Shown here one piece after another: positions 7,325 to 42,171 of a stretch of 64,000 bases of DNA. Origin of the DNA: Malacoraja senta. Its lineage: Eukaryota. Each line of letters begins with the position of its first letter. Position 1 is the first letter of the stretch. Where the stretch lies: positions 62,001 through 126,000 of the forward strand of contig JAXLNO010005853.1 of the NCBI GenBank assembly GCA_038087875.1. The letters are read 5' to 3'. The notes beneath the pieces are model-generated. The model saw only the letters and a program-made list of their open reading frames with translations, was not told the origin of the DNA and did not search any database. Made by a program: the position numbers and the translations under genes.

Positions 7325-7379
7325 TTACTGTTTGTATAAGAACTGGCCAGAACTGCCTCAGAAGTCAATAGTACCTGAC

Positions 7380-8087: not shown

Positions 8088-8089
8088 TG

Positions 8090-8640: not shown

Positions 8641-8726
8641 TGGTCTACGCTGTCACTGGGAGCTCATTCCTCTTAAGGTTGTTCAATATGATATTATCGT
8701 TTTCAGCATAACATACGTTTCCTTAC

Positions 8727-11987: not shown

Positions 11988-12187
11988 CTAGAGAGGGATA
12001 AAAGTCAATTACATTCACTGTTATTCATTGGTGCAGGGGGAGAACCAGGAAGGGGTGAAGATTTGAAAGAGACCCAGCAGGAGAATGGAGTGCAATATTC
12101 AGAGAGGAAACAGAACGAAGCTCATTCTTCTCACCGTTGTTCAATGTGATTTTATCATTTACTCCTCAACACTGAATGTTTCCTTAC

Positions 12188-14220: not shown

Positions 14221-14446
14221 TTCTTGGAAAGTCGAGATGAGATTCGATTGAAGTGGACACAATAACAACTAGTTTTGAAGACAAGGAGACAGATTTAAAT
14301 TGTCATGAACATAAGCAAAAATGATGCAAAGTACATTTCATTAATCCAGGGCCTCACTGCCTGTGACGTTGGTAGATTCAAACAATGCTTCAGATAGAGA
14401 GATTGCCGATACTGCTGTTGTTGAATGAATATAAGATAATGATGAG

Positions 14447-15030: not shown

Positions 15031-15285
15031 GGTTGTTTTGATATCACTATAGATCTCCCTCCTGAACTGTGATTCAGCAATCCTGTTATTCATCCATAAC
15101 AGATCAGTGCTGAAGTTTGGTTGTGTTTAGGTTCATTGTTGCATCATCAGGCTCTTGAACCAAGACTGAGCACCAAACTATTGTGTACTTTGTATAAGGT
15201 TACACCAAGTACTTCAAATGTTATTCAAATGATTTTACCATGTATAACAAATATTGTATTATTGTTTGTTGTGAAATTATTATAT

Positions 15286-16314: not shown

Positions 16315-16494
16315 ATTATATGTTGCATCAATGTGCCTGCAAAGTTGCAGCAATGAATAATTGTATTGTTCTAACCCCAGTGCATATGACTATTAAACAC
16401 ACCTGACTGGTGTAATTTGGGGGATTGTGTGGAAAGAATGGGGGACTGGGACTGATGGATGTCAATGGTCAGACGGCTCTGGGGAATAGATAGA

Positions 16495-16866
16495 TTCCAG
16501 GAAGGCCAGGAAGCGAGCGGGCAAGATCATCTCTGACCCCTCTCACCCTAGCCACAAACTCTTTGAATCACTTCCCTCTGGAAGGCGACTCCGGACTGTC
16601 AAAGCTGCCACAGCCAGACATAAAAACAGTTTTTATCCACGAGTAGTTGCTTTAAACAGCCAAAAATCTGATGCCTCCCTTTGATCTGGTATTTTGTTGG
16701 TTCACATGCTTGATCAATGGTGTTTTATTATTAATGTTTAGTGTTTTCTGAGTAATTCGTAACTGTCACTGTATGTCATGTTGTTACGTGGGCGGAGCAC
16801 CAAGGCAAATTCCTTGTATGTGAATACTTGGCCAATAAACTTACTTACTTATTTACTTACTTACTT
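16495..16866 (+). mobile_element. Rex1-like LINE 3' end with (TTAC)n tail (mirror at about 30556-30945, -)
   Basis: KIISDPSHP.HKLFESLPSGRRLRTV..RHKNSFYPR, followed by AATAAA and a (TTAC)n tail. Confidence 0.7.
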
Positions 16867-17879
16867 CACAAGTACTTGTGGAAAGTTTCTTTCCTCCTGC
16901 TTATGATTCAAAAACCACAGGTCAGGGATTTGGAAAAAGTAGTCAGACATTCAGGACAGAGGTCAAGAAATTCCCTCCAAGAATGTTTGTGAACCTACTG
17001 AATTTTCCATCCCAGAGTTTAGTTTGTTGTCACCTGTACCAAGGTACGGGGTAAAGCTTTTATTACATGCTAACTTGTCAACAAAAAGACTATACATGAT
17101 TACAATCAAGCAATCCACATTGTGCAGAAGCTGTGGATAAAAAGTAGTTGAGTAAGTTCAAACTAAAGGTCCACAGTTTTTCTGGGTCTCATGGAGATCA
17201 CTGTCTGGGGGATCTCTCAGTGAATGAACAAGGTCCAGAATTAGCCATGATTTAATGGATGAGAGTTGGTTCGAGCATCTGTGTGCCTGACTCCTTCTCC
17301 CATTTCACGTAATAGTCGAAGCATTGTTTTAAGAACCCGGGACTACCCCTACCTGTTCACTAACACTGACTGAACAAATGCTGTCTCTCCAATCTGCCAG
17401 GGTCAATTTTGATTCTCTGTTTCACCATTCTACACTTAATGCTGCCTCGAGAAAGTAACCAACATTATCAAGGACAACTAATACCCTGACATTCTCACAC
17501 CCAGAAGATACAAACACTTGACAGTAGTTACCACCAGATGGAAGAACAACTTCTTACCTATTGTTAGAGTCTTGAATGGACCTCACAAATGCTGGGGTTG
17601 AATTACCCAATCTTCCAATCTACCGCGTTAAACGCTTGCACTATTCTTTAGTAGCGCTTTCACTGTAGCTGTCATACTACATTCTCCACTTTGTTTATTT
17701 TCTCTTTTACAGTGCCTGATGCACACATCTAAGGTATGATTCTTCCAACCTCATCTATTGCATTATGTGTCCCCAATGTGATGAATACTTGTGTTCAGTT
17801 TGCCAAGGCCTGCTGGAGCTCCTGGTTACCAAGCTTTTTAACTCCTCTTTCTGTTCCCACACTGACCTGACTGTCACTG

Positions 17880-18450
17880 GCCTTGTGTATTATCAGTGTG
17901 AGAGCAACGCAAACTGGAAGAACAGCAGCTCATGGTCAGCTTGAGTAGCTTATAACCCAACCGTATGAACACTGAACTCTCAAAGTTCAAGTAATACCTC
18001 CCCCCCCCCCCCCTACCAGCCCACTGTGTACACATTGCTCCCATTATCCCTGTCACACTGCTCCTTCTCCCGTATTCATCTCCCATCCTTGAATCCCATA
18101 ATTCCTTCTATCACAAGTCTTTCCCCTGCCCATCTCCCCAGGCCCATTCCACCCATTTACCTCCACCTTTACATTTTGTTTCCTTGTCTGACACCTTTTA
18201 CGTTTCCTTTTCACCACTTGCCATTATCACTGTCCATCCATCTGATAAGCACCTCCCCCGTGCCCACCCCCCACCTCCATCCACCTATCATTGGGCAAGC
18301 TTTGCCTCGTTCCCAACTTTCTCCCTACTACTCCATCAGTTTGAAGGGAACCGACCCGGATAATTGCCTGTCCATTTCCTCCACCGATGCTGCTTGACCC
18401 ACTGTGTCTTCAGCACTTTGTGTTTAGCTCATGGTTCCAGCATCTGCAGT
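17880..18450 (+). mobile_element. Penelope-like 3' end (mirror at about 28970-29540, -)
   Basis: RKLEEQQLMVSLSSL.PNRMNTELSKFK followed by the typical C-rich 3' region. Confidence 0.65.
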
Positions 18451-18917
18451 TTCTAGTGCCTCAATGGTATGATTTGTCTGGATAGCACTCGGAAAAATGT
18501 CACTGTATCTCAGTGCCCCAGACAATAATAAACCAATACCAATATCTGAAACTTAACTGGAGGAGACATAATATGTGACTATAACAGCAGGCCAGATGTG
18601 GCAATGACATCACCCCATTCCACAGTGACTGTACATCATGGTCAAGGCAGAAATGAGGAGTATGAGTGAAGATGGTTATCACAAACTACAGCAGGATCTT
18701 GATCAGTGGGGCAAGTGGGTTGAGGGATGGTTAATAGAGTTAAATTCAGTTTAGTGCAACGTGTTGTATTTTAGGCAGTCAAACCAGGGCATGATCTCCC
18801 AGTGATGTACCCAACAAGTCAGCAGCTTGAACAATTACCAGCCATGCCAGTATCATCGGAATCACAGGAAGCAGGGAGGAAGACAAATTGTTTGTTTGCA
18901 GCACAATAATTCCTCAC

Positions 18918-19298
18918 CTGATACTGTGATTTTCCCATGTTGGCATCCAAACTTTCCTGCATTTCCCGGGAGCTCAACACGACAGTTGAGGATCTTGTTT
19001 GTATCCGTCGTTCTCAGCTGATTAATGATTATGGAAGCATCGTTCTTCCGAGGGTTCCCCATTGGTTTGTAGCGGTTTTCTACATTATCCAGGATGTTAT
19101 TAATATACTTGCCGCTTGATCGATAATTTGTGTATTTGAAAAAGATCTTCTGGGTCTTCCACTCACTCCAGATGATGCTTATTTTGCCTTTGTATTGATG
19201 GTTAGGGTGAGTGAACTTGCAGTACAGAACCACCGGCTTCCCCTCCCTCCCCATCACATTGTCCGGTGTCTCCATGGTCCAACCGTTTATACTGTTGC
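18918..19298 (-). CDS. V-set exon 1' (left arm)
   Basis: Mirror of 28123-28503 with 4 substitutions by hand count, CRVE retained and splice sites intact. Confidence 0.85.
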
Positions 19299-25936: not shown

Positions 25937-25985
25937 ATGCTGTTCATTTTGCTTTGTGCCTTTGCACTGCCTGTCACCGCTAAAC
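25937..25985 (+). CDS. Leader (signal peptide) exon MLFILLCAFALPVTAK
   Basis: ATG at 25937 with A at -3, a hydrophobic core, a V-T-A cleavage-type motif, and a consensus GTAAGT donor at 25986. The 49 nt length gives phase 1, matching V1. Not shown in the ORF track because it is too short. Confidence 0.85.
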
Positions 25986-28900
25986 GTAAGTATCCTTTAA
26001 TAAGGAGCAGCAGTTGGTTTTCTGGCTGCTTCACTGTGAGTGAAATGATTAACTGTATGAGATAGACTTGTGTGTCCGTGGAAACAGAGCAGGATCAGTC
26101 TTTTGATGCTGTACTTAAGGTGAGGCAGTCTTCCAGAAAGGGAGTATGTGTGTGTGTGAAGACATTTAATACAAACATTTTACAATACAGTAAAGGATGG
26201 GTTTGAGATTATAATGCTGGTGTCAGAGCAGCTGGGGAGGTTGTGTTTAGTTGTCGAACCCACACCTGGATGAAGATATTAGCCCTTGAGAGGGGGTGAA
26301 GGGCATTGTGTCCTTGGCATAAAGGTGAGAAAGGCAACGTTGATGAGAAATATCTATTCTGAGAGTAATGCACCTATAGAATTATCAAGTTCAAAGTAGT
26401 TCAAGCCAAGCCACCTCTTGTCTTCAGGCAAGGAGCTGGATATTTTCCTGGGCTAGAGAAATCTGGCAAGGAATGGGACAAAGTTCAATTCTGTATTGAT
26501 TTGGGTTTAAGAGCCATAATCATATTGACGGTTGACCAGGCTTGAACAGCCGAATAGCTTCCTGTGTTGCTCTGAATGTCTTTGCTCTCATTGTTGATTC
26601 TGATCCTAATCAAATTGGGTTTGGTTTATTATTGTCACATGTACTGAGGTTCAGTGAAAACCTGCACCAGGGATAATACCTTTCCCAAAATAACATCTCA
26701 TATGCTAAGAATGAAATGTTATTGAGATCTTCCATATACCTTGCAGTGGCCACAAACATTTGTTTATACGACACTTCCTCTGTATGTGTAATGCTTTATT
26801 CTTTACTCTATTTGTTTTCTCTAATGCACTATGTGATGTAATCATGAATGGTACAATTTAGCCGGATAACACACAAAATAATTTTTCGCTTATCTCAGCA
26901 CACATGAAAATAATAAACCAATACTAATTTTCCTCAATCAGTATTACCGCCCCATCTAAAATATCCCTTCCCTCTCCATTATCAATACCTGTAGCCAGGA
27001 CCATTAAATGTCTGATCCTGCCCGGACTCTGCTTCATTTTCCCATATAGATATTTCTACCTATTAATAACCAGGCTCACTCACATATTTACTACTTTCCT
27101 GCTATCTGCCACTCACAATCTTGGTGCACATTATATCTCTTTTCTGTTGCCACACACTAGTAATAGATACTGATCCATTACTTTGCCTGTTTGGCTCAAA
27201 CTCTTCCTCGTGCACCAATAAATTTCCCTACTACAACTGTCCCAGTGAGGCTGAGGTGCAACCCATTGATCTTGGAGACGTCTTTCCTGCTGCAGAACTG
27301 GTCCAATGCCACTAGAATTTAGAGCAGAAACGAGAAAGTCATGGAAATTAGTGCAGTAATTAAAATGTCCCGAGCATCGCAGTAACCAGAATTCTTGTGG
27401 ATTAGCACAGCAACTAGAATATCACAAGAATTGAGCAGTAATTCAGCTCAAAAATCAATCCATGGCTCCACAGCCCCAGTTTCGACCCTTCACCGAAACA
27501 CTGAAGGCAACTTAGAGTAGTCTGTTAATTAACGATGCGCATCTTTGGGATGTGGGGAAACAACCTAAGTAAGAGAAACCCATACAGTTATAGGTGGAAA
27601 GTGCAGACTACACACAGCATCCGAGGGCAGGATTAAACTGTGAATCCCAGGAGTTGTGAGTTAGCAGCTCCACGAGCTACTCCACTGTGCCAGCTGTGTA
27701 CATCCTCGATCAGTGGTCAGGTACTTCCCTAGTGGGATCTTTCTGTGCACTACTTGCCTGTTGCATTCCCATCGCTACTTCACCGGCAACACTTCAAACC
27801 TGTGAAGCATTATGGGACCATCCCCTGACAGTGAGGGAAGTGATGTAAATGCAAGGTCTCTCCTGGACAGCAGCTTAAAGCTGTGAGAGATGTGGCTCCA
27901 GTGAAGAGCCAGCACAGCCCGGAGAAGGGGAACCACTGTTAGTGTCACAGTTCACCTCTCCCATTTCTCACAGCTCACCACGTGGTGAGGGTGACACACA
28001 ACACAGCAGCATCGCAGTTCAACCGCCTTCCACAAGGGCAGGGGACCCAGGGTGGGCGCAGCCTCCTACAGTGACTGTGGCCCTCAGTTTAGTCTTAACG
28101 TTACATCTCTGTGTCTTCACAGGCAACAGTATAAACGGTTGGACCATGGAGACACCGGACAATGTGATGGGGAGGGAGGGGAAGCTGGTGGTTCTGTACT
28201 GCAAGTTCACTCACCCTAACCATCAATACAAAGGCAAAATAAGCATCATCTGGAGTGAGTGGAAGACCCAGAAGATCTTTTTCAAATACACAAATTATCG
28301 ATCAAGCGGCAAGTATATTAATAACATCCTGGATAATGTAGAAAACCGCTACAAACCAATGGGGAACCCTCGGAAGAACGATGCTTCCCTAATCATTAAT
28401 CAGCTGAGAACGACGGATACAAACAAGATCCTCAACTGTCGTGTTGAGCTCACGGGAAATGCAGGAAAGTTAGGATGCCAACATGGGAAAATCACAGTAT
28501 CAGGTGAGGAATTATTGTGCTGCAAACAAACAATTTGTCTTCCTCCCTGCTTCCTGTGATTCCGATGATACTGGCATGGCTGGTAATTGTTCAAGCTGCT
28601 GACTTGTTGGGTATATCACTGGGAGATCATGCCCTGGTTTGACTGCCTAAAATACAACACGTTGCACTAAACTGAATTTAACTCTATTAACCATCCCTCA
28701 ACCACTTGCCCCACTGATCAAGATCCTGCTGTAGTTTGTGATAACCATCTTCACTCATACTCCTCATTTCTGCCTTGACCATGATGTACAGTCACTGTGG
28801 AATGGGGGTGATGTCATTGCCACATCTGGCCTGCTGTTATAGTCACATATTATGTCTCCTCCAGTTAAGTTTCAGATATTGGTATTGGTTTATTATTGTC

Positions 28901-31900
28901 TGGGGCACTGAGATACAGTGACATTTTTCCGAGTGCTATCCAGACAAATCATACCATTGAGGCACTAGAAACTGCAGATGCTGGAACCATGAGCTAAACA
29001 CAAAGTGCTGAAGACACAGTGGGTCAAGCAGCATCGGTGGAGGAAATGGACAGGCAATTATCCGGGTCGGTTCCCTTCAAACTGATGGAGTAGTAGGGAG
29101 AAAGTTGGGAACGGGGCAAAGCTTGCCCAATGATAGGTGGATGGAGGTGGGGGGTGGGCACGGGGGAGGTGCTTATCAGATGGATGGACAGTGATAATGG
29201 CGAGTGGTGAAAAGGAAACATAAAAGGTGTCAGACAAGGAAACAAAATGTAAAGGTGGAGGTAAATGGGTGGAATGGGCCTGGGGAGATGGGCAGGGGAA
29301 AGACTTGTGATAGAAGGAATTATGGGATTCAAGGATGGGAGATGAATACGGGAGAAGGAGCAGTGTGACAGGGATAATGGGAGCAATGTGTACACAGTGG
29401 GCTGGTAGGGGGGGGGGGGGAGGTATTACTTGAACTTTGAGAGTTCAGTGTTCATACGGTTGGGTTATAAGCTACTCAAGCTGACCATGAGCTGCTGTTC
29501 TTCCAGTTTGCGTCTGCTCTCACACTGATAATACACAAGGCCAGTGACAGTCAGGTCAGCGTGGGAACAGAAAGAGGAGTTAAAAAGCTTGGTAACCAGG
29601 AGCTCCAGCAGGCCTTGGCAGACTGAACACAAGTATTCATCACATTGGGGACACATAATGCAATAGATGAGGTTGGAAGAATCATACCTTAGATGTGTGC
29701 ATCAGGCACTGTAAAAGAGAAAATAAACAAAGTGGAGAATGTAGTATGACAGCTACAGTGAAAGCGCTACTAAAGAATAGTGCAAGCGTTTAACGCGGTA
29801 GATTGGAAGATTGGGTAATTCAACCCCAGCATTTGTGAGGTCCATTCAAGACTCTAACAATAGGTAAGAAGTTGTTCTTCCATCTGGTGGTAACTACTGT
29901 CAAGTGTTTGTATCTTCTGGGTGTGAGAATGTCAGGGTATTAGTTGTCCTTGATAATGTTGGTTACTTTCTCGAGGCAGCATCAAGTGTAGAATGGTGAA
30001 ACAGAGAATCAAAATTGACCCTGGCAGATTGGAGAGACAGCATTTGTTCAGGCAGTGTTAGTGAACAGGTAGGGGTAGTCCCGGGTTTTTAAAACAATGC
30101 TTCGACTATTACGTGAAATGGGAGAAGGAGTCAGGCACACAGATGCTCGAACCAACTCTCATCCATTAAATCATGGCTAATTCTGGACCTTGTTCATTCA
30201 CTGAGAGATCCCCCAGACAGTGGTCTCCATGAGACCCAGAAAAACTGTGGACCTTTAGTTTGAACTTACTCAACTACTTTTTATCCACAGCTTCTGCATA
30301 ATGTGGATTGCTTGATTGTAATCATGTATAGTCTTTTCGTTGACAGGTTAGCATGTAATAAAAGCTTTTCACCGTACCTTGGTACAGGTGACAACAAACT
30401 AAACTCTGGGATGGAAAATTCAGTAGGTTCACAAACATTCTTGGAGGGAATTTCTTGACCTCTGTCCTGAATGTCTGACTACTTTTTCCAAATCCCTGAC
30501 CTGTGGTTTTTGAAACATAAGCAGGAGGAAAGAAACTTTCCACAAGTACTTGTGAAGTAAGTAAATAAATAAGTAAGTAAGTTTATTGGCCAAGTATTCA
30601 CATACAAGGAATTTGCCTTGGTGCTCCGCCCACGTAACAACATGACATACAGTGACAGTTACGAATTACTCAGAAAACACTAAACATTAATAATAATAAA
30701 ACATTAATGTTAAAACACCATTGATCAAGCATGTGAACCAACAAAATACCAGATCAAAGGGAGGCATCAGATTTTTGGTTGTTTAAAGCAACTACTCGTG
30801 GATAAAAACTGTTTTTATGTCTGGCTGTGGCAGCTTTGACAGTCCGGAGTCGCCTTCCAGAGGGAAGTGATTCAAAGAGTTTGTGGCTAGGGTGAGAGGG
30901 GTCAGAGATGATCTTGCCCGCTCGCTTCCTGGCCTTCCTGGAATCTATCTATTCCCCAGAGCCGTCTGACCATTGACATCCATCAGTCCCAGTCCCCCAT
31001 TCTTTCCACACAATCCCCCAAATTACACCAGTCAGGTGTGTTTAATAGTCATATGCACTGGGGTTAGAACAATACAATTATTCATTGCTGCAACTTTGCA
31101 GGCACATTGATGCAACATATAATTAGGTATGTTACAAAACTTACCTTCAGTCGCGGTGTAATTCTGCCACTGGCCGTGTGCGCGATTTTGGCGCCTTTAA
31201 GGGGGGGCGGGTTTCTCCTCCCTTGTCCTGGTTAATATTTTGTTGGAGTACAAGCCTTGGCTGACAAATCGTTCCTACCGGCGTTTTGTGAATTTTTTAT
31301 TTTTATTAAATCGTCAATGTCAGCGCTAGAGTAATTTTAAAAGCAGCTCCTGAAGCGTCAACGCCGGTAACGGGGACGGATTTCACACACGGGACAGGTA
31401 AACGAAAGTGGTTTCTTTAAATGTATAAAAGTGCTTCTTAAGAAGCCTTTAATTCACATTTTTTCATGCGACACGGTGATTTTATTCCCCGAATTAACGG
31501 CAGTATTTTTCATGCCAATACGGGGTTAAATTCACCGCAAATGAACGTTCCAAAAGATCGCGTTCCAGAAATCCTCACTCGCAAGATGAATTAAATGCCC
31601 ATTAATTTACAGGTATTAAACATTCAATTCCTTCTGTTTGGCCTGTAAATTCATGAAAATTAGATTTAAAAATTATGTTATATTGTGAATTAGTGTGTGA
31701 ATGTTATTTGGACACTTAGGCTATTTAAAAATGTTAATCTATTCTTAAGAAATTGATAGATGTTTAGATCTAGTAATTGAATTTTGTAATTAGCTACAAT
31801 TAGGTAACTAACTAATTATATGCTTTACTTTCATGTCTTCGAAGTAAGATTGTTTCATATTTGTTTCAGAATGCTTCAATCTATAATAACTGAAAATTTC

Positions 31901-34900
31901 TTTCAGTTATCATAATTTTTAAGAAAGTTATCGGCTTTTAACTGTCCTCGATCACAGCTTTTGTGTTAAGTCAATGGAAAAGCAATAGGGAACTAGATGC
32001 TAATTTCTGAGTATGATAATGGCCATAACTTTTTTAATACTGAAGATATGAAAGTGAATTAAGTGTTAAATTAAACTTATTTTTATGCTTTATCTGATGG
32101 GATAAATTGCAGACTTTATTTTTAAAATCTCAAAATTTTGTAATATTGCTAATATAATAATTTCACAACAAACAATAATAAAATATTTGTTATACATGGT
32201 AAAATCATTTGAATAACATTTGAAGTACTTGGTGTAACCTTATACAAAGTACATAATAGTTTGGTGCTCAGTCTTGGTTCAAGAGCCTGATGATGCAACA
32301 ATGAACCTAAACACAACCAAACTTCAGCACTGATCTGTTATGGATGAATAACAGGATTGCTGAATCACAGTTCAGGAGGGAGATCTATAGTGATATCAAA
32401 ACAACCTGTTTAATGGTAAGATTGTCTTCTTGAACCTGGAGATAATGGTTCACATTTCCTGTACCTTCTACCTGGCAGTAGCAACAAGAGGAGATCAAGC
32501 CGTGTTCTGTGCAACTGTGATATTGGCTGCCCACCTGAGGCAACACCTGTAAGTCCTTTCATTGTTGTGGAGGTTGAAATCCATGATGGACTGGGCAATG
32601 TCTTTCTGCAGCCTCCTTGGTTTTTGGGGCATTCTGGTTACCAAAGGAGGCTGTGAAGTAACCAGTCAGTATGGTCCACGGTACACCTGTAGAAGTTATA
32701 GTGCATTTGGTGATGTGACTCAAACATCTGAGGAATTGGAAGAGCTGATGAGCTTACTTTGTGATTGCATCAATGTACTGGGCCCTGGAAAACTCAGTGA
32801 AGTGCATGTCCAGGAACTTGAAGCTCTTCACTCTCACCACTGTCGTGCTCCCAATGATAACAGGTTGATGGAATCTAGGTTTTCCCTTCCCCAAGTCAAC
32901 AATGAACTCCTTGGTTTGGCTCAAGTTCACAGCAAGATCATTGTTCTGGCAGCACTCAACCAGATTATGGGTCTGCCTCCTGTACATTGACTCATCATTA
33001 TCTTATATTCATTCAACAACAGCAGTATCGGCAATCTCTCTATCTGAAGCATTGTTTGAATCTACCAACGTCACAGGCAGTGAGGCCCTGGATTAATGAA
33101 ATGTACTTTGCATCATTTTTGCTTATGTTCATGACAATTTAAATCTGTCTCCTTGTCTTCAAAACTAGTTGTTATTGTGTCCACTTCAATCGAATCTCAT
33201 CTCGACTTTCCAAGAAGACTGAACCAGCTTTTCCAGTCTAACCCTGGAGGTGACTCTGAAGGAACTTTTATGCATCCTCTCTCATCCTTGACATCCTGGA
33301 GAGTGATGACTGGAATTGGAAACAAATCTCTTGTAGTTGAACAGGTTCAACACAGCCTTCACCCCTATATTTACTCTTATTCACTTACCAAACAAGTGAC
33401 CACAACAGCCGATCACCAGGGCAATCCTGTCCCCAACCTATCACAGATTCCTCCACCTTCCCACTTCTCTGCAACATAAAATACATGTCTTTATTGTAAC
33501 TTTTCCCATCAACCTGACAATCATCTGTTTCTCTCCTGATTTGTTCTGTTTTATGGCAATGTAGCTATCGTAATCTTGTACTTCATGCTTTCATCATTGA
33601 GCCCAGCGTCTCTCACTTCACTAACCATTGCCTCAATGTGTCACATTTGTTTTATTTAACTGTGTCTTGTAAGTTCTCCACATGTTCCATGGAACCCTTG
33701 AGCATTGTTCTGTTTAACTATCTTATCTTCATTTCTGTGTAGGTATTATCACTCGGTGTGTGTCTGTCAATATTTATCACACACACCTTCTCCACCTTTT
33801 CATATTCCATCTGCAATCTTGTTACATTCGATGGAAAATGAACATGTAGTACAACATGCAGTAGAAAACGTAGTAGAGGTATACTACATCCACCAGATCC
33901 TTCCTTATCAATCCTGCTAGATATATTGTCCACCCTAACCCTAAACTCCACTTACATTGACAACAGAACTTCCCCTTCATCAAGAATTAAAACATAAATT
34001 GCTGTAAAATGAATCAGGTCTGAATGCAGAGTCAATTGGAGGAGCGACAATATCCATGTAGGAAGGTGTGTTGCTGCCACTTAGGAGGGTTTAATCTAGT
34101 TTGGCAGAAGGTTGGGAACTGGAGCAGGTGGAGGAATTGAATGGGATGTAGACTTCAGCTTAAGACTGATCAGAAGGGCTGGCAGGGCCAGGTTAATGAA
34201 CACAGTGGAACTGATGGGCTGAAGTGTGTTTATTTCAATGCTATGCGTATTATGTGTAAGGCAGATGAATGTAGAGTTTGAATTAATGCATGGAAATATG
34301 ATGTTGTGGCCATTAGAGTTTTGGTGAGCGAGGGGCAGGACTGACACCACAATGTTCCAAGGTTTTAGGCGTGATTTAGCAACATTGTAGGTTATATAAA
34401 AATACAAGCAGGTCACCTGCAATTATTCAAGTTGATTTGAGAATTCTGCATATTATTTATAAAGAAGATGAAGTTACATTTACAGTTACATTTCACCGCT
34501 CTAGAGCAGCGCAGGAGGGTCAGGGACAGATGGGTCAGAGTGGGAGTGGGATGGAGAAACATGGTCACAGATGTGTAGGAAGGAACTGCAGATGCTGATT
34601 TATACCGAAGATAGACACAACATGCTGGAGTAACACAACGTGCCAGGCAGCATCTATGGAGAAATGGAATAGATTCTTCTTCAGGTCTGAAGAAGGGTTC
34701 CATTCTGAAACATCACGTACTCCTTTTCTCCAGAGATGCTGCCTGATCCGCTGAGTTACTCCAGCATTTTGTGTCTATCAACATGGTCACAGACACAGGT
34801 GAAGTATTGATGAAGAAAATGTGGTTAATGCATTCGACCAATGAATGATGTCCATATTTTAAATCATTCTCTATACGAGGTGATGTCAGCGCATCCATGG

Positions 34901-37900
34901 TGATCGGAAAGAGAGGAGGTGGTGCCACACTGAGATGCACCTTCAGCCCCTCGAGCGCAAAGAGCAGGGTGATCACTATCCTCTGGATGAAGGGGACTCC
35001 ATGGGAAGAGTCCGTTGTCTTTAATCATACCCGCTCCGACCCCACAAGCAGTCATGGCACTGACAATGTATATAGAGGAGGTCGATATGAGCTGGTGGGA
35101 AACCTAGACAAGGGAGACGCCTCCATCAGAGTGAGGGGACTCACGTTGAATGACACCAACAACTATTTCTGTCATGTTTGGATCTGGAAATCCCCTCAGA
35201 ATATTCAGGTGACTCAGGATGAGACGGAACTACAGGTTTTGGGTAAGGAAACAGTCAGTGTTGAGGAGTAAATGATAAAATCACATTGAACAACGGTGAG
35301 AAGAATCAGCTTCGTTCTGTTTCCTCTCTGAATATTTCACTCCATTCCCCTGCTGGGTCTCTTTCAAATCTTCACCCCTTCCTGGTTCTCCCCCTGCACC
35401 AATGAATAACAGTGAATGTAATTTACTTTTATCCCTCTCTAGGCTTCAGCCACCATCTTGGAGCGATGGTGATAATGTATCTGGAGATACCTGTGTGTGC
35501 GGGAGGGAATGGACAGGTTGATCATTTCAGCTGCCGTTTATTGAGTCTACTTTCTTGTGATTGGCTTCACTTTCTAGTGGTTCAACATAGGTGAACATCA
35601 CGTCTAATCTCCATTGCTGGTGTTCATGGGAGAATCATGGGACCTCCAGTGACATTGTTGTCAGCCTCTGGTTCTGGTAATGGGGGAGGGGAGAAGAGAG
35701 AGTAACTCGGGTGTGAGTGATCCTTGATTATGTTGGCTGCTTTCCCAAGGAATAAATGCAGTTGATGGGCGGGGGAACGAGGGAAAACCTTTTATTCAAT
35801 CTACATGGTTAATCCTGAGCTTTCTGTTGCTTGTAATTTTAATCATCCATGCAATTCCCCCTCTGACTATTTTTTGTGACTTCCTTATAACCAGTCTCAT
35901 GCAATTTGAAGAACAGGGCTCACTGCATCATTGCAGACTCCATTGAATTCAAGAATTTTGGATGATACATTTTCTCTCTTTTATCAGTAACCAGTTCTAC
36001 TGAAGATAAGCAAAATGGAATATTAATCAGTTATTCTCTCAACGATTATTGCAACTTAAAATAAATTAGCTGAAGTTGCAGAGGTTGTATAGAGGGGTGT
36101 TGATGAAATTATCTGGTTGATAAATTAAGGAAGGTAACTGGAGACAGAGAACACAAACAAAGATATAAACCAGAGCTGCAAAATGCACGTCAGAGCTGCA
36201 AGAAACACCCAGCAGATCAGGCAGTGTCAGTGGAGAGAGGAGAACTGAGTCAGTATCACAGATGGATAACCTGCTGTAGAACTTCTGATAAAAACAACGG
36301 GAAAGTTACCAGAAATTGATGTATTCAATGTTGACTCAATGGTTCAATGGGTCAACCTTGAATAGAACAATTTCTGGTGATTTGCCCGCTGTTTGTATCA
36401 AAACTGGCGAGTTCTACAGCATCTGTGATACTGACTCAGTTCTCCTGAAGAAGAGTCACGACCCGAAACGTCACCCATTCACTCTATCCAGAGATACTGC
36501 CTGCCCGCTGAATTACTCCAGCATTTTGTGTCTATTTTCGGTTCAATGGTTTCTTTATTATCACATGTACCAAGTACAGTGAAATACATTTTTTCATACA
36601 GATCAGTAAGAATATCACCTTACATCAATAAGCACAATCCCCCCGGTTAGTACATAATATACAGAAGAACCCACTGAGTCTGGGCAACAGTTGCCATTTT
36701 GCACCATTTTACAGTCCTCGTTGCAGTGGCCACAGAGGCCCATTGCAGCCACCCCCTCCATTCCAGTTGTCCTGGAATATTGACCCTCACCTTGCACAGC
36801 CCTCTTCAGCCCTTCTTCCCCAGGGGAGGTGTGCGGTGGGGGGGTTCCTCCCGCAGATGTGATTAAGGCGCGGAAGTTAAAAAACGCCACCACTCCTAAT
36901 TCGGTTACCCAGGCCTTTTCTGGTTGGCTGCCAGTTACTAGCAGAGTTCCGCAGGGCTCGGTGCTGGGGCCGCTGGTCTTCACGCTGTATATTATTGATT
37001 TAGATGAGGGGATTGAAGGCTTTGTGGCTAAGTTTGCGGATAATACGAAAATAGGTGGAGGGGCAGGTAGTGCAGAGAAAGCAGGGACTCTGCAGAAGAA
37101 CTTGGATAGGTTTGGAGAGTGGGCAGAGAAGTGGCAGACGGAAAAGTGTTGAAAAGTGTGGAGTCATGTATTTTGCTAATAGGATTAAAGGCGTTGATTA
37201 TTTTCTAAATGGAGAGAGACTCCAGAAATCGGAGGTGCAAGGCGACTTGGGAATGCTGGTGCAGGTTTCCCAAAAAGTTAATCTGCAAGTCGAATCAGTT
37301 GTAAAGAAAGCAAACGCAATGCTAGCATTTATTTCAAGAGGGCTTATATACTAAAGTAGGGATGTAATGCTGAGACTCTTTCAGGCGCTGGTCAGGCCAC
37401 ATTTGGAATATTGTGAGCAATTTTAGGCACCATATCTGAGGAAGGATGTGCTGGCTCTGGAGAGGGTCCAGAGGAGGTTCACAAGAATGATCCCAGGAAT
37501 GAGTAGGATAACATCAGATAAATATTTGACGGCACTGGGCCTATGTTTGCTGGAGTTTAGAAGAATGAGGGGGGACCTCATTGAAACAGACAGAATAGTG
37601 AAAGGCTTGGATGTGGGGAGGATGTTTCCACTAGTGGGAGAGTCTAAGATGAGCAGTTTTAGCCTCAGCATTAAAGGACGTTCTTTTAGGAAGGAGATGA
37701 GGTGGAATTTCGTTCGTCGGAGTGGGTTGAATCTATGGGATTCTTTGCCACAGAAGGCTGTGGAGGTAAAGTCAGTGGATATATTTAAGGCAGAGATAAA
37801 TAGATTCCTGATTAGTGCGGGTGTCAGAGGTTATGAGAAGGCAGGAGAATTGAGTTAGGAACGATAGATCAGCCACGATTGAATGGCGGAGTAGACTTAA

Positions 37901-40900
37901 TGGGCCGAATGGTCTCATTCTACTCCTATCGCGTAAGATCCTATGAACCGTGCCTCCCTCAGATGAGCTTCGGGTGCAGACCCTAAGACCCCCACCCCTC
38001 CTAATTCAGTTAACCGCTCCTTTAGTCACCCTCCATCCTCCTCTCTGGTTCCTGGTCTTCAAGGTCAAGGCTCCATCTTGTCCAGACTGAAGCTGAGATG
38101 TCTTTACTTGAGATTGGCCCTTATTAGAATAGTGCAGGAGGTCAGGAGCAGATGGATCAGAGTGAGAATGGGATGGACAATCCAAGTCACAAGTATGGAT
38201 GAACTATTGATAAAGACCGTGTGCTTATTGTATTCAAATATTAAATCATATTCACACTTTAAAACTCTTCTCTATGCAAGGTGATAATGACAGAGCATCC
38301 ATAGTGATTGGAAGGAAGGGTGCGACTGCCACACTGCCCTGTTCCTTCAGCGCCTCAAACAGGAATCCCAGCTCCATCACCATCAGCTGGATGAAGGGGA
38401 ATCCACCAAAATGGTCTGTTGTCTTTCGTCACACTTCTCCCCGCCCAGCAGCACATCGCATTCCTGAAAATGTAAATAAAGGAGATCGATATGAGCTGGT
38501 GGGAAACCTTGAGCAGGGAGACGCCTCCATCAGAGTGAAGGGACTCAAACTGGGTGACGCCAGTGATTACTCCTGTCATGTTTATGTCAGGACTTCAACG
38601 TTGACGACTGTGACTCAGGATGAGATGAAACTGCAGGTTGTGGGTAAGGAAACGTATGTTATGCTGAAAACGATAATATCATATTGAACAACCTTAAGAG
38701 GAATGAGCTCCCAGTGACAGCGTAGACCAGCACAGGAACAGGCCCTTTGGCCCGCAATGTCTGTACCGAACATGATGCTACGTTGATCTCGTCTACCTGC
38801 AGGTGATACATTTCTTCCATTACCTGCATTTCAAAAAGCCTCTAAAACTCCACTATCGTAGCTGCCTCCACCTCCACCCCTAGCAGTATTTTCCTGGCAC
38901 CCACCACCCTCTGTGTAAACAATAACTTTCCCCACATATCTCCTTTCATCTTTTCCCCTCTGTCCTTATCACAATACCGTCTATTCGTTGACATTTCTGC
39001 CACAGGCAAAAGGTTCTGACTCTCTCTCCTATCCATGTCTTTCATATTTTTATAAACTTTCAACAGTCCAGAGAAAGCAGTTCAAGTATGTCCGACCTTT
39101 TCATATAACTAATACCCTCTAATCCAGGCAGCATTCTGGTAAACCTCTTCTGACCCCTTTCCAAAGTCTCCACATCCTTCCTGTAATGGGTGAGAACTGC
39201 ACATAAAACTGAATGCAATAATCCCAGTGTCGTAACTAAAGTTGTATAGAGCTACAACATGACTTCCTGACTCTTGTATTCAGTAGATCGACACTAAAAG
39301 CTGGAGTAACTCACCGGGACAGGTAGCATCTCTGGAGAGAAGGAATGGATGACGTTTTGGGTTGAGTATCTTCTTCCCAACCCAAAACGTGACCCATCCT
39401 TCTCTCCAGAGATGCTGCCTGTCCCGCTGAGTTACTCCAGCTTTTTGTGTCCATCTTCGGTTTTAACCAGCATCTGCAGTTCCTTCCTACACATCTTGTA
39501 TTCAGTACCTTGACCAATTAAACAAGAATACTGTACACGTTTTTAACATGTTGCCATTTTCAGGGAGTTATGGAATTGGATCCCAATATTTTTCTGTACA
39601 TCAGTGGTTTTAAGGGTCTTGCCCTTGTCTACTTTCCACTTGCATTCAACCTCCCAAAGTCAACACTTCACACATGTTCAGATCAAACTCCATCTGCCAT
39701 TTCTCTGCCTATATCTGTATTTAGATTAAAAATTGCAGAATCTTTCGGCAGTTCTACGTTTATCTGCCCTCCTCATGATACTCTTGCATTTTCAATAAGC
39801 ACACTACAGCCCATGAGTGGGTTTGATATTTGAGCTGCCACTTATGTGGACTGTACTCTTGCAATTGGCTTCACTTTCTCATGTTTGAACAGAGGTGAAC
39901 GTCACTGTCTCATCTCCAATGTTGGTGTTGACGGGAGTCTTGTGGCATCTCCAGTGATATTGTCATCAGCCTATGGTTATGGTGGTATGGGTCAGGTACT
40001 ATTGACTTCTGAGGCAGTTCTGGCCAGTTCTTATACAAACAGTAAAGGGCCTGTCCCACTTTGGTGACAACTGAAGACAACTGAAGACTTCTCTTGACGC
40101 CGGTACCTGTCGCCGGTTGACGTAGGTTGACGTAGGTAGTCGCCAATTGAATTCACCGAGGTCAGCACCGGCGACAACCTACGTTATCCTGGCGACAACA
40201 TACATTATCCTGGCGACAACCTACGACAGCATCTACGTCAGGAGAAGACAAGCTACGACAAGCCCAAGGTCGCCGAGTGTCGCCGAAAAGTTTTCACCAT
40301 TTCAAAATGCAGCGGTGACCAGAAAAATGCTACGACTCTTTGGGCGACTTAAGGAGACGACTCACAACCATACAGGTGACACCCGGCGACCGTGTGGTGA
40401 CTACCCAGTCGCCTGTAGTCACCTACAAAATCGCGTATGATGGACTGGCTCTTAAGCAAGTTATTAAAATTGTTGCTTTAAATGTTAGCACAAAGGCTTC
40501 ATGCTGCCCAGACAGAAGATGAGGTGTTGTTACTTGAGATTGGGCCTCGTTAGAACAGTCCAGGAGGTCTGAGACAGACAGATCAGAGTGGGAGTGGGAT
40601 GGAGAATCAAAGTCACAGGCATGGATGATGTATTTTTATAAACCATGTGGAATAGATTGTTAAATACAACTTTTCTCTATACAAGATGGAAAGAAGAACA
40701 CATCCATGGTGATTGGGAAGAGAAGAGATTCAGCCACACTGCCCTGCTTCTTCAGCAACTTGAACAAGAATCCCAGCCCCATCACTGTCCGCTGGATGAA
40801 GGGGAATCCACAGGAAGAGTCCACAGTCTTTAATCACACTCACCCCCACTCTGTGAACCCTCCCTACACTGTCACTGTAAAGGGAGGAGGTCGACATGAG

Positions 40901-42171
40901 CTGGTGGGAAAACTAGACCAGGGAGACGCCTCTATCAGAGTGAAGGAGCTCAGACTGAACGACAGCAGTGACTATTTCTGTTACGTTTGGGTCAGGAATT
41001 CCACACAGGAGACGGTGACTCAGGATGAGACGAAACTGGAGGTTGTGGGTAAGGAAAGATCTGTCTGTGTTGTGCTGTGAACGATAAAATCACATTAACA
41101 ACTGTAAGAGGACATGAGATCCACTGACAGCTGGAGCCGAGATCGGCCCAATCCATTGTAGGTTCCATTCCTTGCCCTGGGCTTCCCTTGCTCAGCACTG
41201 CCCCCAGTGGTTGGAAAACAGTGCTGATTCCAGCCAGGATGCACAGAGCTCCCTGCAGCAGGATCAGAGATTCAGACCCACATTCACCTGCTGAACCTCC
41301 AGTCCCTGTGTCTGTGGCATGGTCTGTGTTGCAAAGATCCACAGACTGCCCTGGGGTATTTACATCCGTCTCTTTCATTCACATCGACTCCGGGAACCTG
41401 TATGTTTTCTCACTGAATATTACATAGAACAGTACAGCACAGGAACAGGCCCTTTGGCCCTCAATATCTGTGCAGAACATAATGGTATTGTAAGTTAAAC
41501 TAATATCATCTGCCGACACATGATCCATATCCCTCCATTCCCTGTAGATCCATGTGCTTCTCAAACACACTATCATATCTGCAAATATTTCACTGCAGTC
41601 TCCTAGGTGTGTCCTTCCAATCCCCATTCAGATGGACTCTATCCGCACACACCATCAACTGTGATTCATTCAATGAATTTAATTGAATTTTTTCCTTCTC
41701 CAAGTCCCAGCCACCATCCTGGAGCTGTCTGTTGTGAGCGACAATGTAACTGGAGAACACACCCTCGTGTGCTGGGCTGAAGGGAAGCCCCCTGCAAACA
41801 TCACGTGGATCGGCCCAGGGAACAGCGCACTGCCTGTGACCAGTAGTGAGATGACAGTCATGCATGATCCAGAGAAATTACTGACTGTGGGAAAACTGCT
41901 TCACCCCAGGCTGCCAGGGAAATACACGTGTGTGGCTGTGAATGAACACCAGAGAGACACGTGTGAGATCCACCTATTCGAGGATGGACTAAGAGCGTTG
42001 GCCATTCGGGCTGCCATTTATGCGGTCTATTTTCTTATAATTGGCTTCACTTTCTGCTGGTTGAAGAGAGGTGAACGTCACCATCTCAGCTCCATTGCCG
42101 GTGTCAACAGGAGGGATGCTGCATCTCCAGTGACAGTGGCAGGTTCTGTTGATGTGGATCAGGCAGTGTAA
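25937..42171 (+). CDS. Siglec-15-like Ig-superfamily receptor, complete predicted gene (leader-V1-V2-V3-V4-C2-TM-tail), join 25937-25985, 28123-28503, 34880-35242, 38281-38643, 40686-41048, 41705-42171; 661 aa
   Basis: The six exons sum to 1986 nt (662 codons including stop). Every intron is GT-AG and phase 1, and there is no internal stop. V1 (WTMETP..VLYCKFTHPNHQYKGKISIIW..RYKPMGNPRKNDAS..CRVE) and C2 (VCWAEGKPPANITWIGP..GKYTCVAVN) resemble my recollection of human SIGLEC15 (WSMQVP..LPCTFTHPHRHYDGPLTAIW..GNPRRNDLS..YFCRVE; LCTAEGEPPPALAWSGP..GRYTCTAAN). No database search was run and splicing is predicted. Confidence 0.8.
28123..28503 (+). CDS. V-set exon 1 (Siglec-15-like, retains F-strand CRVE arginine)
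   Basis: Acceptor gtcttcacag|GC, donor TCAG|gtgagg, 381 nt; B-strand Cys (LYC), C-strand Trp (IIW) and F-strand Cys (NCRVE). Confidence 0.9.
31124..32151. mobile_element. Mirror copy of the 15286-16314 transposon
   Basis: TSD atataat on both sides. Confidence 0.85.
34574..34780. repeat. Penelope-derived hairpin insertion with ~14-bp TSD (mirror at about 12655-12862)
   Basis: Flanked by the direct repeat aacatggtcacaga; internal inverted arms. Confidence 0.7.
34880..35242 (+). CDS. V-set exon 2
   Basis: Acceptor ttctctatacgag| (GAG), donor TTGG|gtaagg, 363 nt; motifs LRCTF, ILWMKG, GDASIRV, DTNNYFC. Confidence 0.85.
35443..35680 (+). pseudogene. Decayed C2/TM exon downstream of V2
   Basis: cagccaccatcttggagc..gataatgtatctggaga and attggcttcactttctagtggttcaacataggtgaacatcac align with the start and TM end of 41705-42171. 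Most of C2 is deleted and the ancestral frame has stops. Mirror at 11750-11987 (-). Confidence 0.8.
36915..37925 (+). mobile_element. CR1 LINE fragment
   Basis: Mirror of 9451-10460. Confidence 0.9.
38281..38643 (+). CDS. V-set exon 3
   Basis: Acceptor tctatgcaag|, donor GTGG|gtaagg, 363 nt; motifs LPCSF, ISWMKG, GDASIRV, DASDYSC. Confidence 0.9.
39775..39990 (+). pseudogene. Decayed C2-end/TM exon downstream of V3
   Basis: gctgccacttatgtggac..attggcttcactttctcatgtttgaacagaggtgaacgtcac aligns with the functional TM/tail (IGFTFSCLNRGERH vs IGFTFCWLKRGERH). It contains an in-frame TGA and its 5' part is replaced by a CR1 fragment. Mirror at about 7380-7595 (-). Confidence 0.75.
40046..40452. 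mobile_element. PIF/Harbinger-like MITE (mirror)
   Basis: TAA TSD on both sides; mirror of 6922-7324. Confidence 0.7.
40686..41048 (+). CDS. V-set exon 4
   Basis: Acceptor ttttctctatacaag|, donor GTGG|gtaagg, 363 nt; motifs LPCFF, VRWMKG, GDASIRV, DSSDYFC. Confidence 0.9.
41705..42171 (+). CDS. C2-set + transmembrane + cytoplasmic exon
   Basis: Acceptor ttccttctccaag|TC, C2 Cys pair, hydrophobic stretch LAIRAAIYAVYFLIIGFTFCWL, basic stop-transfer KR, and TAA ending at 42171. A possible internal donor AGAG|gtgaac lies at 42070/42071. Confidence 0.85.

What the first reader, a model, noticed from the sequence alone, without database searches (positions are those of the whole stretch)
25937..42171. 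Siglec-15-like receptor with four tandem V-set domains, a non-canonical architecture
Established: Siglecs have a single N-terminal V-set domain followed by C2-set domains, and Siglec-15 is V-C2-TM. Seen: here a Siglec-15-like V1 is followed by three more V-set exons, which are related to each other and distinct from V1, and then a Siglec-15-like C2/TM exon. I found no second leader in the introns. The V2-V3 and V3-V4 introns are largely filled by TEs and relic exons, leaving little room for separate promoters. Inference: a single 661-aa L-V-V-V-V-C2-TM protein, possibly a lineage-specific receptor family.
Basis: partly seen in the sequence, partly recalled or inferred. Interest (0 to 1): 0.8.

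Follow-up and report, generated by a model that had tools for sequence, protein, structure and literature searches.

The report
Skate Siglec-15-like receptor, four V domains
This skate gene encodes a Siglec-15-like immune receptor whose sugar-binding tip is followed by three extra, duplicated V-type domains; the same layout is already in automatic gene models of related skates but appears undescribed in the literature I could search.

Summary
Six exons with correct phases and AG/GT sites give an open 661-aa protein: leader, V1, V2, V3, V4, and one exon holding C2, a membrane span and a short tail.

V1 is a Siglec-15-type V domain. Human Siglec-15 is its best match among solved structures and reviewed AlphaFold models, and the sialic-acid arginine (CRVEL) is kept. 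V2-V4 are a distinct V-set type without that arginine.

The single-gene reading is supported. RefSeq models from Amblyraja and Leucoraja join V1-V2-V3-V4-C2, and the Amblyraja locus has the same exon order. About a dozen sharks, rays and a chimaera carry leader-V1-V2type-C2-TM genes. An RNA-like contig from a relative joins V2 directly to V3.

Decayed C2/TM exons behind V2 and V3 show that the gene grew by tandem duplication of a V2type+C2/TM unit. An arginine in the membrane span and a tyrosine-free tail indicate an activating, adaptor-coupled receptor. Relatives include near-identical inhibitory partners.

No transcript from this species was seen, and the V1-V2 junction was not observed directly. 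A second copy lies inverted in the window.

Verdict: a real, lineage-specific variant of a known receptor family, and moderately interesting. Other first-stage notes on this genome flag related features (s1-140928, s1-140161, s1-141033).

The parts
25937..25985 (+). Leader (signal peptide) exon, 49 nt coding, phase 1, GT donor
   Evidence: The same leader peptide is joined to V1 in the skate RefSeq models P0161, P0164 and P0002. It is the only copy in the window.
28123..28503 (+). V1 exon: Siglec-15-type V-set domain with GW(T)ME N-terminal motif and CRVEL (canonical arginine kept)
   Evidence: Best PDB hit is human Siglec-15 7ZOZ, E 1.8e-13, against CD33 at 1e-5. AlphaFold model pLDDT 89. Best Swiss-Prot AFDB hit is Q6ZMC9 Siglec-15, TM 0.80, E 4.7e-10, with the next hit at 6e-7. 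Tree placement. Arginine status.
34880..35242 (+). V2 exon (V2-type V-set, 363 nt, phase 1-1)
   Evidence: Pfam V-set 6.6e-16. Orthologous to domain 2 of the Amblyraja and Leucoraja four-V models, support 100/100. Joined directly to V3 in X1 contig record 1.
35410..35657 (+). Relic C2/TM pseudo-exon behind V2: acceptor and first bases of C2, then about 220 nt of C2 deleted, then a TM/tail part with four in-frame stops
   Evidence: blastn to 41671-41725 and 41997-42138; translation; tblastn; sequence.
38281..38643 (+). V3 exon (V2-type V-set, 363 nt, phase 1-1)
   Evidence: Pfam V-set 2.9e-13. Orthologous to domain 3 of the Amblyraja and Leucoraja models, 100/100. Joined to V2 in the X1 contig, which ends exactly at 38643.
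39828..39965 (+). Relic TM/tail pseudo-exon behind V3 (C2 part gone, stop at its start)
   Evidence: blastn to 42004-42141, 77.5%; translation. A counterpart lies before V4 in the Amblyraja locus L001 at 28358-28489.
40686..41048 (+). V4 exon (V2-type V-set, 363 nt, phase 1-1)
   Evidence: Pfam V-set 5.6e-13. 95% identical to domain 4 of the Leucoraja model, clade 100/99.
41705..42171 (+). Last exon: C2-type Ig domain, membrane span (residues about 604-627) with Arg608, and a 34-aa tyrosine-free tail ending in a stop
   Evidence: Pfam I-set/Ig_2/C2-set_2. PDB: Siglec-15 domain 2 at E 6e-5. Hydropathy and tail. The same TM and tail occur in Rhinoraja models P0005 and P0151.
5203..19298 (-). Inverted second copy of the gene without a leader: V1' 18918-19298, V2' 12188-12556 (+6 nt), V3' 8727-9089, V4' 6326-6688, C2/TM' 5203-5669. 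All are open with intact splice sites.
   Evidence: Arms are 97-98% identical in DNA. dN/dS between copies is 0.89. Derived amino-acid changes are 16 in copy A and 20 in copy B.

Best explanation
One gene encodes a type-I membrane receptor of 661 aa: signal peptide, a Siglec-15-type V domain at the tip, three tandem V2-type V-set domains, one C2-type domain, a membrane span carrying an arginine, and a short tail without tyrosines. Shown: the exons, their phases and the open frame; V1's specific kinship with Siglec-15, including the arginine that binds sialic acid in human Siglec-15; the same domain order in gene models of three other skate genera; a spliced V2-V3 contig in a relative; and the decayed C2/TM exons. 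Inferred: cartilaginous fishes ancestrally had leader-V1-V2type-C2-TM. In the skate lineage a V2type+C2/TM unit was duplicated in tandem twice. The inner C2/TM exons decayed, and because all V exons are phase 1-1 they were spliced into one longer ectodomain. Also inferred: V1 binds sialylated glycans. V2-V4 act mainly as a stalk that lifts V1 away from the membrane, possibly with binding roles of their own. The arginine in the membrane span recruits an ITAM adaptor, so this is the activating partner of near-identical inhibitory receptors with ITIM-like tails seen in Leucoraja and Rhinoraja.
For: Exon structure and open frame. V1 is Siglec-15-type: 7ZOZ E 1.8e-13 with shared CxFTHP, GNPRxND and CRVE motifs; AFDB Swiss-Prot best hit Q6ZMC9, TM 0.80; in the tree the cartilaginous-fish V1 clade (100/97) is sister to bony-vertebrate Siglec-15 V domains (74/88); arginine kept; role of R143 from PMC10264397. 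Same architecture elsewhere: P0001, P0163, P0183, P0162 and P0164; Amblyraja locus order V1, V2, V3, relic TM, V4, C2; each of V2, V3 and V4 has its own orthologue in Amblyraja and Leucoraja (99-100 support). The V1-V2type-C2-TM form occurs in Callorhinchus, Heptranchias, Heterodontus, Cetorhinus, Chiloscyllium, Mustelus, Pristis, Hypanus, Mobula, Narcine and Leucoraja. Transcript: the 1145-nt X1 contig covers V2 and V3 back to back, with 411 further nt upstream of V2. X1 has no depth over repeat-free intron stretches, whereas the DNA-like runs cover them. Selection for open frames: V2-V4 differ at about 26% of bases yet are all open. Substitution-only simulation gives P about 0.005 for that, while the relic exons of the same units carry 1-4 stops and large deletions. 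Activating type: a single hydrophobic span with Arg608 and no tyrosine in the tail. Paired partners: within Rhinoraja, P0005 and P0167 are near-identical through V and C2 (80% over the whole 255-column alignment, which also covers the unrelated TM end) and diverge abruptly before the membrane, one with the Arg-TM and short tail, the other with a neutral TM and YSxV motifs. Leucoraja P0163 is a four-V form with PIYSVV and LIYSIV in its tail.
Against: No RNA from this species was seen. The one RNA-like contig is about 95% identical, so it comes from a relative or paralogue. Its 411 nt upstream of V2 could not be read, and the run was not listed as holding V1. The V1-V2 and V4-C2 junctions are therefore supported only by homologous gene models, whose transcript support I could not check. 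At least one neighbouring Amblyraja model (P0002) is clearly chimeric. dN/dS is high, 0.79 against Amblyraja and 0.89 between the two copies. That fits a fast-evolving immune receptor but also relaxed constraint. Sialic-acid binding, adaptor pairing and a stalk role are inferences. The membrane span does not resemble that of the conserved two-V orthologue.
Confidence: 0.75

Rival explanations
1. The gene is single, but V2, V3 and V4 are cassette exons used in varying combinations, so the 661-aa form is only one of several isoforms (V1-V4-C2, V1-V2-V3-C2 and so on). This does not exclude the main reading.
For: All three exons are 363 nt and phase 1-1, so any subset keeps the frame. The X1 contig stops exactly at the V3 donor (38643), as an assembly graph does at a branch. 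RefSeq lists several isoforms for related genes.
Against: The Leucoraja isoforms retrieved (X1, X3) both contain all four V domains. A contig end can equally reflect paralogue variation. No skipping junction was seen.
Confidence: 0.3
2. The locus is a decaying or silent copy: intact by youth rather than by selection, and not expressed as a receptor.
For: dN/dS is 0.79-0.89. The window holds two copies, one without a visible leader. No transcript from this species was seen. Relic exons show that parts of the locus do decay.
Against: V2-V4 have stayed open over about 26% base divergence while their sister C2/TM exons decayed. Splice sites are intact in both copies. Fold-defining residues are invariant across 14 species. 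Orthologous domains are intact in three other skate genera. Copy A has a leader with a proper donor.
Confidence: 0.1
3. V1 (with the leader) and V2-V4 (with C2/TM) belong to separate genes, and the four-V protein is an artefact of reading exons together.
For: The V1-V2 intron is 6.4 kb and the junction was not observed directly. Run X1 was not listed as holding V1.
Against: V1 is followed by a V2-type domain in gene models of about a dozen cartilaginous fishes predicted independently. V1's exon ends in phase 1 with no membrane anchor of its own. No second leader exists in the window. The X1 contig carries 411 nt upstream of V2, the length of V1 plus 30 nt, and its last two bases before V2 are AG, as at the end of V1.
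Confidence: 0.05

Closest known systems
Siglec-15 of bony vertebrates (human Q6ZMC9, structure 7ZOZ)
   Same: V1 is its closest relative by sequence and by predicted fold. It shares the GW-S/T-M N-terminal motif, CxFTHP, GNPRxND and the CRVE arginine. It also has a C2-type domain, a positively charged membrane span and a short tail.
   Different: Three V2-type V-set domains sit between V1 and C2. The human C95-C104 extra disulfide is absent. The membrane charge is an arginine near the outer end of the span. The gene belongs to a multi-copy, fast-evolving family rather than a single conserved gene.
[quoted passage not shown] Leucoraja XP_055488168.1, Pristis, Hypanus, Mobula, Heterodontus, Callorhinchus
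   Same: Same V1 type, same V2 type, same C2 and the same order. They are the evident ancestral form.
   Different: They have one V2-type domain, not three. The conserved shark and ray orthologue has leucine in place of the arginine (CLVDL) and a lysine-bearing membrane span unrelated to the one here.
RefSeq 'uncharacterized protein' models XP_032874704.1 (Amblyraja radiata) and LOC129695366 (Leucoraja erinacea)
   Same: Same V1-V2-V3-V4-C2 order, domain-by-domain orthology and 86-95% identity in V2-V4.
   Different: The Leucoraja gene has a neutral membrane span and a long tail with ITIM-like motifs, so it is the inhibitory type. The Amblyraja model lacks a clean membrane span.
Siglec-12 (two V-set domains) and the paired receptors Siglec-5/14 and Siglec-11/16
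   Same: There is precedent for more than one V-set domain in a Siglec. There is also precedent for near-identical ectodomains on activating and inhibitory partners (PMC6288428).
   Different: Those are mammalian CD33-related Siglecs. Here the extra V domains are of a different, arginine-less type and number three.
Other V-exon amplifications in the same family: Callorhinchus LOC103188797 (V1 x3 + V2type), Heptranchias (V2type x2), lungfish LOC122808572 (seven V1-type domains)
   Same: They show the same evolutionary habit of duplicating phase 1-1 V exons inside a Siglec-15-like gene.
   Different: Different lineages amplified different domains. Skates amplified the V2 type, and together with its C2/TM exon.

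Membership tests
Siglec family (I-type lectins) | N-terminal V-set domain with the conserved arginine on strand F that binds the sialic-acid carboxylate | tested here: met
   V1 aligns to human Siglec-15, with its CRVE arginine opposite R143 (role of R143 in PMC10264397). CRVEL is shared with bony-vertebrate Siglec-15 V domains.
Siglec family (I-type lectins) | Actual binding of sialylated glycans | not testable with these tools
   Needs recombinant V1-Fc, wild type and arginine mutant, on glycan arrays or cells.
Siglec family (I-type lectins) | V-set domain followed only by C2-set domains | tested here: not met
   Three further V-set exons lie between V1 and C2. The known exception is Siglec-12, with two V-sets.
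Siglec-15 | V domain closest to Siglec-15 rather than to other Siglecs or V-set families | tested here: met
   PDB: Siglec-15 at 1.8e-13 against CD33 at 1e-5. AFDB Swiss-Prot: Siglec-15 TM 0.80, E 4.7e-10, against 6e-7 for the next hit. Tree: sister to coelacanth, lungfish, gar, salamander and teleost Siglec-15 V domains with moderate support, 74/88. No CD33-type or other Siglec V domains were in the tree.
Siglec-15 | Two-domain ectodomain V-C2 | tested here: not met
   There are five Ig domains, V-V-V-V-C2.
Siglec-15 | Positively charged residue in the membrane span for ITAM-adaptor pairing, and a short tail | tested here: met
   Arg608 lies inside the only hydrophobic span, and the 34-aa tail has no tyrosine. 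The feature is as described in PMC10264397. Which adaptor it pairs with was not tested. From my own knowledge, human Siglec-15 uses a lysine.
Siglec-15 | Extra C'-C'' disulfide (human C95-C104) | tested here: not met
   There are no cysteines in the corresponding stretch of V1 (alignment).
Siglec-15 | One-to-one orthology with the conserved single-copy gene | tested here: inconclusive
   Skates also have a separate conserved two-V gene (P0169, P0184) that RefSeq names Siglec-15. The window's gene belongs to an arginine-bearing, multi-copy sub-lineage together with Pristis_b, Narcine, Heptranchias and Callorhinchus genes. Synteny was not examined.
Paired activating/inhibitory immune receptors | Near-identical ectodomains combined with a charged-TM short tail or with an ITIM-bearing long tail | tested here: met
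   Within Rhinoraja, P0005 (Arg-TM) and P0167 (neutral TM, YSxV motifs) are near-identical through V and C2, 80% over the whole 255-column alignment, which also covers the unrelated TM end. The window has the Arg-TM, and Leucoraja P0163 is a four-V form with an ITIM-like tail. The inhibitory partner in this species' own genome was not located.

The most novel reading that the evidence does not exclude
Cartilaginous fishes turned the otherwise single, conserved Siglec-15 into a fast-evolving family of paired activating and inhibitory receptors, a functional counterpart of mammalian CD33-related Siglecs, KIR or LILR. Ectodomain length in this family is tuned by repeated V-exon amplification: two to four V domains here, seven in a lungfish. 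The arginine-less V2-type domains may be a second ligand-binding module rather than a passive stalk, possibly combined by cassette splicing.
Probability: 0.3. Interest if true: 0.65.

Novelty: new variant of a known kind. Interest (0 to 1): 0.45.

Why it matters
Siglec-15 is treated as the one Siglec conserved in form (V-C2-TM) across vertebrates, and it is a drug target in bone disease and cancer. This locus and its relatives show a different history in the oldest jawed-vertebrate lineage. There the gene carries a second kind of V domain, has multiplied into activating and inhibitory partners, and changes ectodomain length by exon duplication. The decayed exons record the intermediate steps. 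That makes it a clear example of how immune receptors are built from tandem units, and it puts the question of what the extra V domains bind within reach of experiment. The architecture is already in automatic annotations, though, and domain amplification in Ig receptors is common, so the surprise is moderate.

Tried and rejected
- **Word-indexed protein searches.** The search with V1 and the one with coelacanth Siglec-15 returned only three hits each. No mammalian Siglec-15, CD33-type or other Siglec V domains could be added to the tree, so the claim that V1 groups with Siglec-15 rests on fish and amphibian sequences plus the PDB and AFDB rankings.
- **V1-V2 junction.** The stretch limit of read laying (6000 nt) is shorter than the V1-V2 span (6378 nt), so that junction could not be covered. 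The unread 411 nt of the X1 contig were not among the loose ends printed.
- **Run holding V1.** Run X1 was not listed as holding V1. I take this as uninformative, because V1 is the most divergent domain among paralogues (77-79% amino-acid identity).
- **Fold search for V2.** It did not discriminate: JAML, CAR, Siglec-15, P0 and TIM-3 all came within E 1e-7 to 5e-7. By sequence profile the best single-domain PDB match of the V2 type is Siglec-15, at 51.8 bits. Language-model neighbours are CD33-like and CD22-like V fragments. These are leads, not proof, that the V2 type is itself a Siglec-type V domain.
- **Is copy B drifting faster than copy A?** It is not: 20 against 16 derived changes.
- **Invertible single-promoter locus (note s1-140161).** I rejected this idea. 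The palindrome centre is a purine-rich tandem repeat with two assembly gaps, so a second leader may simply be unassembled.
- **Literature.** Four searches found no description of multi-V Siglec-15-like genes in cartilaginous fishes. Subscription journals are not covered.


Full report
**What is in the sequence**

The leader at 25937-25985 begins with ATG, encodes a hydrophobic 16-residue signal peptide and ends at a GTAAGT donor in phase 1. V1 (28123-28503, 381 nt) and three 363-nt exons follow: V2 34880-35242, V3 38281-38643 and V4 40686-41048. All have AG acceptors and GT donors and are phase 1-1. A last exon (41705-42171) runs to a stop. Spliced, they give an open 661-aa protein.

Pfam V-set matches all four V exons, and the last exon matches I-set, Ig_2 and C2-set_2. 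V2-V4 are 53-59% identical to one another and about 25-30% identical to V1.

The last exon also holds the only hydrophobic span of the protein (residues about 604-627), which contains Arg608. After it come a KRGERHH stop-transfer stretch and a 34-residue tail without tyrosine.

**V1 is a Siglec-15-type domain**

- Against all solved structures, V1's best match is human Siglec-15 (7ZOZ, E 1.8e-13), with CD33 next at 1e-5. The alignment shares CxFTHP, GNPRxND and CRVE.
- The arginine of CRVE aligns with R143. According to PMC10264397, R143 makes the salt bridge to sialic acid and is required for binding.
- An AlphaFold model of V1 (pLDDT 89) has human Siglec-15 as its best Swiss-Prot neighbour (TM 0.80, E 4.7e-10). 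All others score 6e-7 or worse, with TM of 0.69 or below.
- I built a domain tree of 82 V domains. The window's V1 sits in a cartilaginous-fish V1 clade (100/97). That clade is sister, with moderate support (74/88), to the V domains of coelacanth, lungfish, gar, salamander and teleost proteins that NCBI names Siglec-15.
The caveat is that I could not obtain mammalian Siglec-15 or other Siglec V domains for the tree.

**V2-V4 are a separate V-set type**

- They lack the arginine, having CHV or CYV after the F-strand cysteine.
- They form a clade (98/89) with the second domain of the two-V genes of sharks, rays and chimaera.
- By sequence profile, their best single-domain match among solved structures is again the Siglec-15 V domain, at 51.8 bits.
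- A profile-profile comparison with V1-type domains gives 99.1% probability.
- Protein-language-model neighbours are CD33-like and CD22-like V fragments.
- Fold search does not discriminate among V-set families.

I therefore regard the V2 type as an old, diverged, probably Siglec-related V domain, but this is not proven.

**One gene or several**

A profile search of 1.84 billion proteins with V2-V4 found RefSeq models with the same layout:
- Amblyraja radiata XP_032874704.1 has V1-V2-V3-V4-C2.
- Leucoraja erinacea LOC129695366 isoforms X3 and X1 (694 and 790 aa) have V1-V2-V3-V4-C2-TM with a long tail.
- Partial models in Rhinoraja longicauda and A. radiata join leader-V1-V2-V3.

The Amblyraja locus has the same exon order, including a relic TM exon before V4. 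In the tree, each of the window's V2, V3 and V4 pairs with domain 2, 3 or 4 of those models (99-100 support). The four-V arrangement therefore predates the split of these skate genera.

More broadly, genes of about 400 aa with leader-V1-V2type-C2-TM occur in Callorhinchus, Heptranchias, Heterodontus, Cetorhinus, Chiloscyllium, Mustelus, Pristis, Hypanus, Mobula, Narcine and Leucoraja. So V1 and a V2-type exon belong to one gene throughout the class.

Direct transcript evidence is limited to one run, X1, whose RNA label is the tool's guess:
- It covers V2 and V3 at depth about 36 but has zero depth over repeat-free intron stretches, unlike the DNA-like runs X2-X4.
- Its 1145-nt contig aligns 34878-35241 immediately next to 38280-643, which is the predicted V2-V3 splice.
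- The contig carries 411 more nt upstream of V2 that the tool did not print. That length equals V1 plus 30 nt, and the two bases before V2 are AG, as at the end of V1.
- The contig is about 95% identical to the window, so it comes from a relative or a paralogue.
- The V1-V2 and V4-C2 junctions of this gene were not seen. The stretch limit of the read tool is shorter than the V1-V2 intron.

**How the gene was built**

Behind V2 lies a C2/TM exon remnant (35410-35657). It keeps the acceptor and first bases, has lost about 220 nt of C2, and has four in-frame stops in the TM part. Behind V3 lies a TM/tail remnant (39828-39965) with a stop at its start. Intron sequence around the V exons is also homologous between units.

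The simplest history is tandem duplication of a V2type+C2/TM unit, decay of the inner C2/TM exons, and splicing of the symmetric V exons into one message. V3, V4 and the second domain of the skate two-V gene form a clade in the quick tree (SH-aLRT 98), so at least that duplication is skate-specific.

The same habit appears elsewhere in the family. Callorhinchus has V1 three times, Heptranchias has the V2 type twice, and a lungfish gene has seven V1-type domains.

**Selection**

dN/dS is high:
- 0.79 against the Amblyraja orthologue;
- 0.74-0.98 among V2-V4;
- 0.89 between the two copies in the window.

On its own this cannot separate fast immune-receptor evolution from relaxed constraint. However, V2-V4 differ at about 26% of bases and are all open with intact splice sites. 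A substitution-only simulation gives about 0.005 for that outcome, while the sister relic exons decayed. The fold-defining residues are invariant across 14 sequences from ten species. I read this as selection for an intact, rapidly changing ectodomain.

**Likely function**

The Arg-bearing membrane span and the tyrosine-free tail mark an adaptor-dependent, activating receptor (principle as in PMC10264397).

Inhibitory counterparts exist in relatives. Within Rhinoraja, P0005 (the same Arg-TM and tail as here) and P0167 (neutral TM and a long tail with YSxV motifs) are near-identical through V and C2 and diverge abruptly before the membrane. The 80% figure from that alignment covers all 255 columns, including the unrelated TM end. 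Leucoraja P0163 is a four-V inhibitory form. This is the pattern of paired receptors such as Siglec-5/14 (PMC6288428).

Sialic-acid binding by V1, a stalk role for V2-V4 and the identity of the adaptor are inferences. The conserved two-V orthologue of sharks and rays has leucine instead of the arginine, so the window's gene belongs to the sub-lineage that could still be a lectin.

**Context**

The gene is one arm of a large inverted duplication. Arm A at 24794-46000 matches arm B at 22000-1297 at 97-98% identity. Copy B has all five Ig exons open and spliceable. It lacks the 651 bp (25448-26098) that hold the promoter region and leader, and only one leader exists in the window. The centre (22262-24377) is a purine-rich tandem repeat with two N gaps. 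A second leader may therefore be unassembled, and I draw no conclusion from its absence.

**Known or new**

Four literature searches found no description of multi-V Siglec-15-like genes in cartilaginous fishes, but subscription journals are not covered. Siglec-12 is a known Siglec with two V-sets. The architecture is already in RefSeq as 'uncharacterized protein' or 'Siglec-15'. I class it as a new variant of a known kind: real, lineage-specific and evolutionarily instructive, but not a new type of system.

Related first-stage notes on this genome:
- s1-140928 (relic exons) agrees with what I found independently.
- s1-140161 (single leader between the cassettes) I checked only partly.
- s1-141033 (a second V-set in a Siglec on another piece of the genome) agrees with the family-wide pattern but was not tested here.

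Noticed in passing
window 1297-22000 (-) and 24794-46000 (+): The window holds a large inverted duplication (palindrome) with arms at least 21 kb long and 97-98% identical, each carrying a copy of the receptor gene. It may extend beyond both ends of what I compared.
   Followed up: partly
window 22062-24377: The palindrome centre is a strongly purine-skewed tandem repeat (GC skew 0.94, AT skew 0.80 in 22001-24000), interrupted by two 200-N gaps (22062-22261, 22586-22785). The centre is therefore not reliably assembled.
   Followed up: partly
window 21322-21324 versus 25448-26098: Copy B lacks the 651 bp that carry the promoter region, the leader exon and the start of intron 1 in copy A. In both copies a CR1-type element tail abuts this point, but the two tails are only 92.7% identical, so they may be independent insertions.
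   Followed up: partly
window 36400-36600, 37400-38000, 39200-39600: These are extremely high-copy repeats (summed contig depths up to millions in DNA-like runs) inside the V2-V3 and V3-V4 introns. CR1-like reverse-transcriptase ORFs lie at 36829-37858 and 24750-25049.
   Followed up: no
P0169, P0170, P0173, P0007, P0176, P0175, P0180 (RefSeq 'Siglec-15' of rays and sharks): The conserved two-V orthologue has CLVDL or CLVNL, that is leucine where Siglecs have the sialic-acid arginine, and a highly conserved lysine-bearing membrane span. It may not be a lectin at all.
   Followed up: partly
P0002 (Amblyraja radiata XP_032874700.1): This is a chimeric gene model. V3-like, V3-like and C2 are fused through a translated 5' UTR to leader and V1, and the model then reads into the V1 intron.
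   Followed up: no
P0155 and P0156 (Callorhinchus milii), P0171 (Heptranchias perlo), P0004 (Protopterus annectens): Other lineages show independent V-exon amplifications in Siglec-15-like genes: V1 x3 or x2 plus V2 type in the elephant shark, V2 type x2 in the sevengill shark, and seven V1-type domains in a lungfish. Gar, salamanders and a serrasalmid teleost have V1-V1 models.
   Followed up: partly
P0021, P0009, P0018, P0022, P0024, P0028, P0031: A second two-V family exists. Its second domain is sister to the V2 type (100/96) and its first domain forms its own clade. The named members are from Heptranchias and Narcine. This looks like a paralogous receptor family built on the same two-domain plan.
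   Followed up: no
window 38643 (run X1, contig record 1): The RNA-like contig ends exactly at the V3 donor site, which hints at alternative continuations (splice variants or paralogues) downstream of V3.
   Followed up: no
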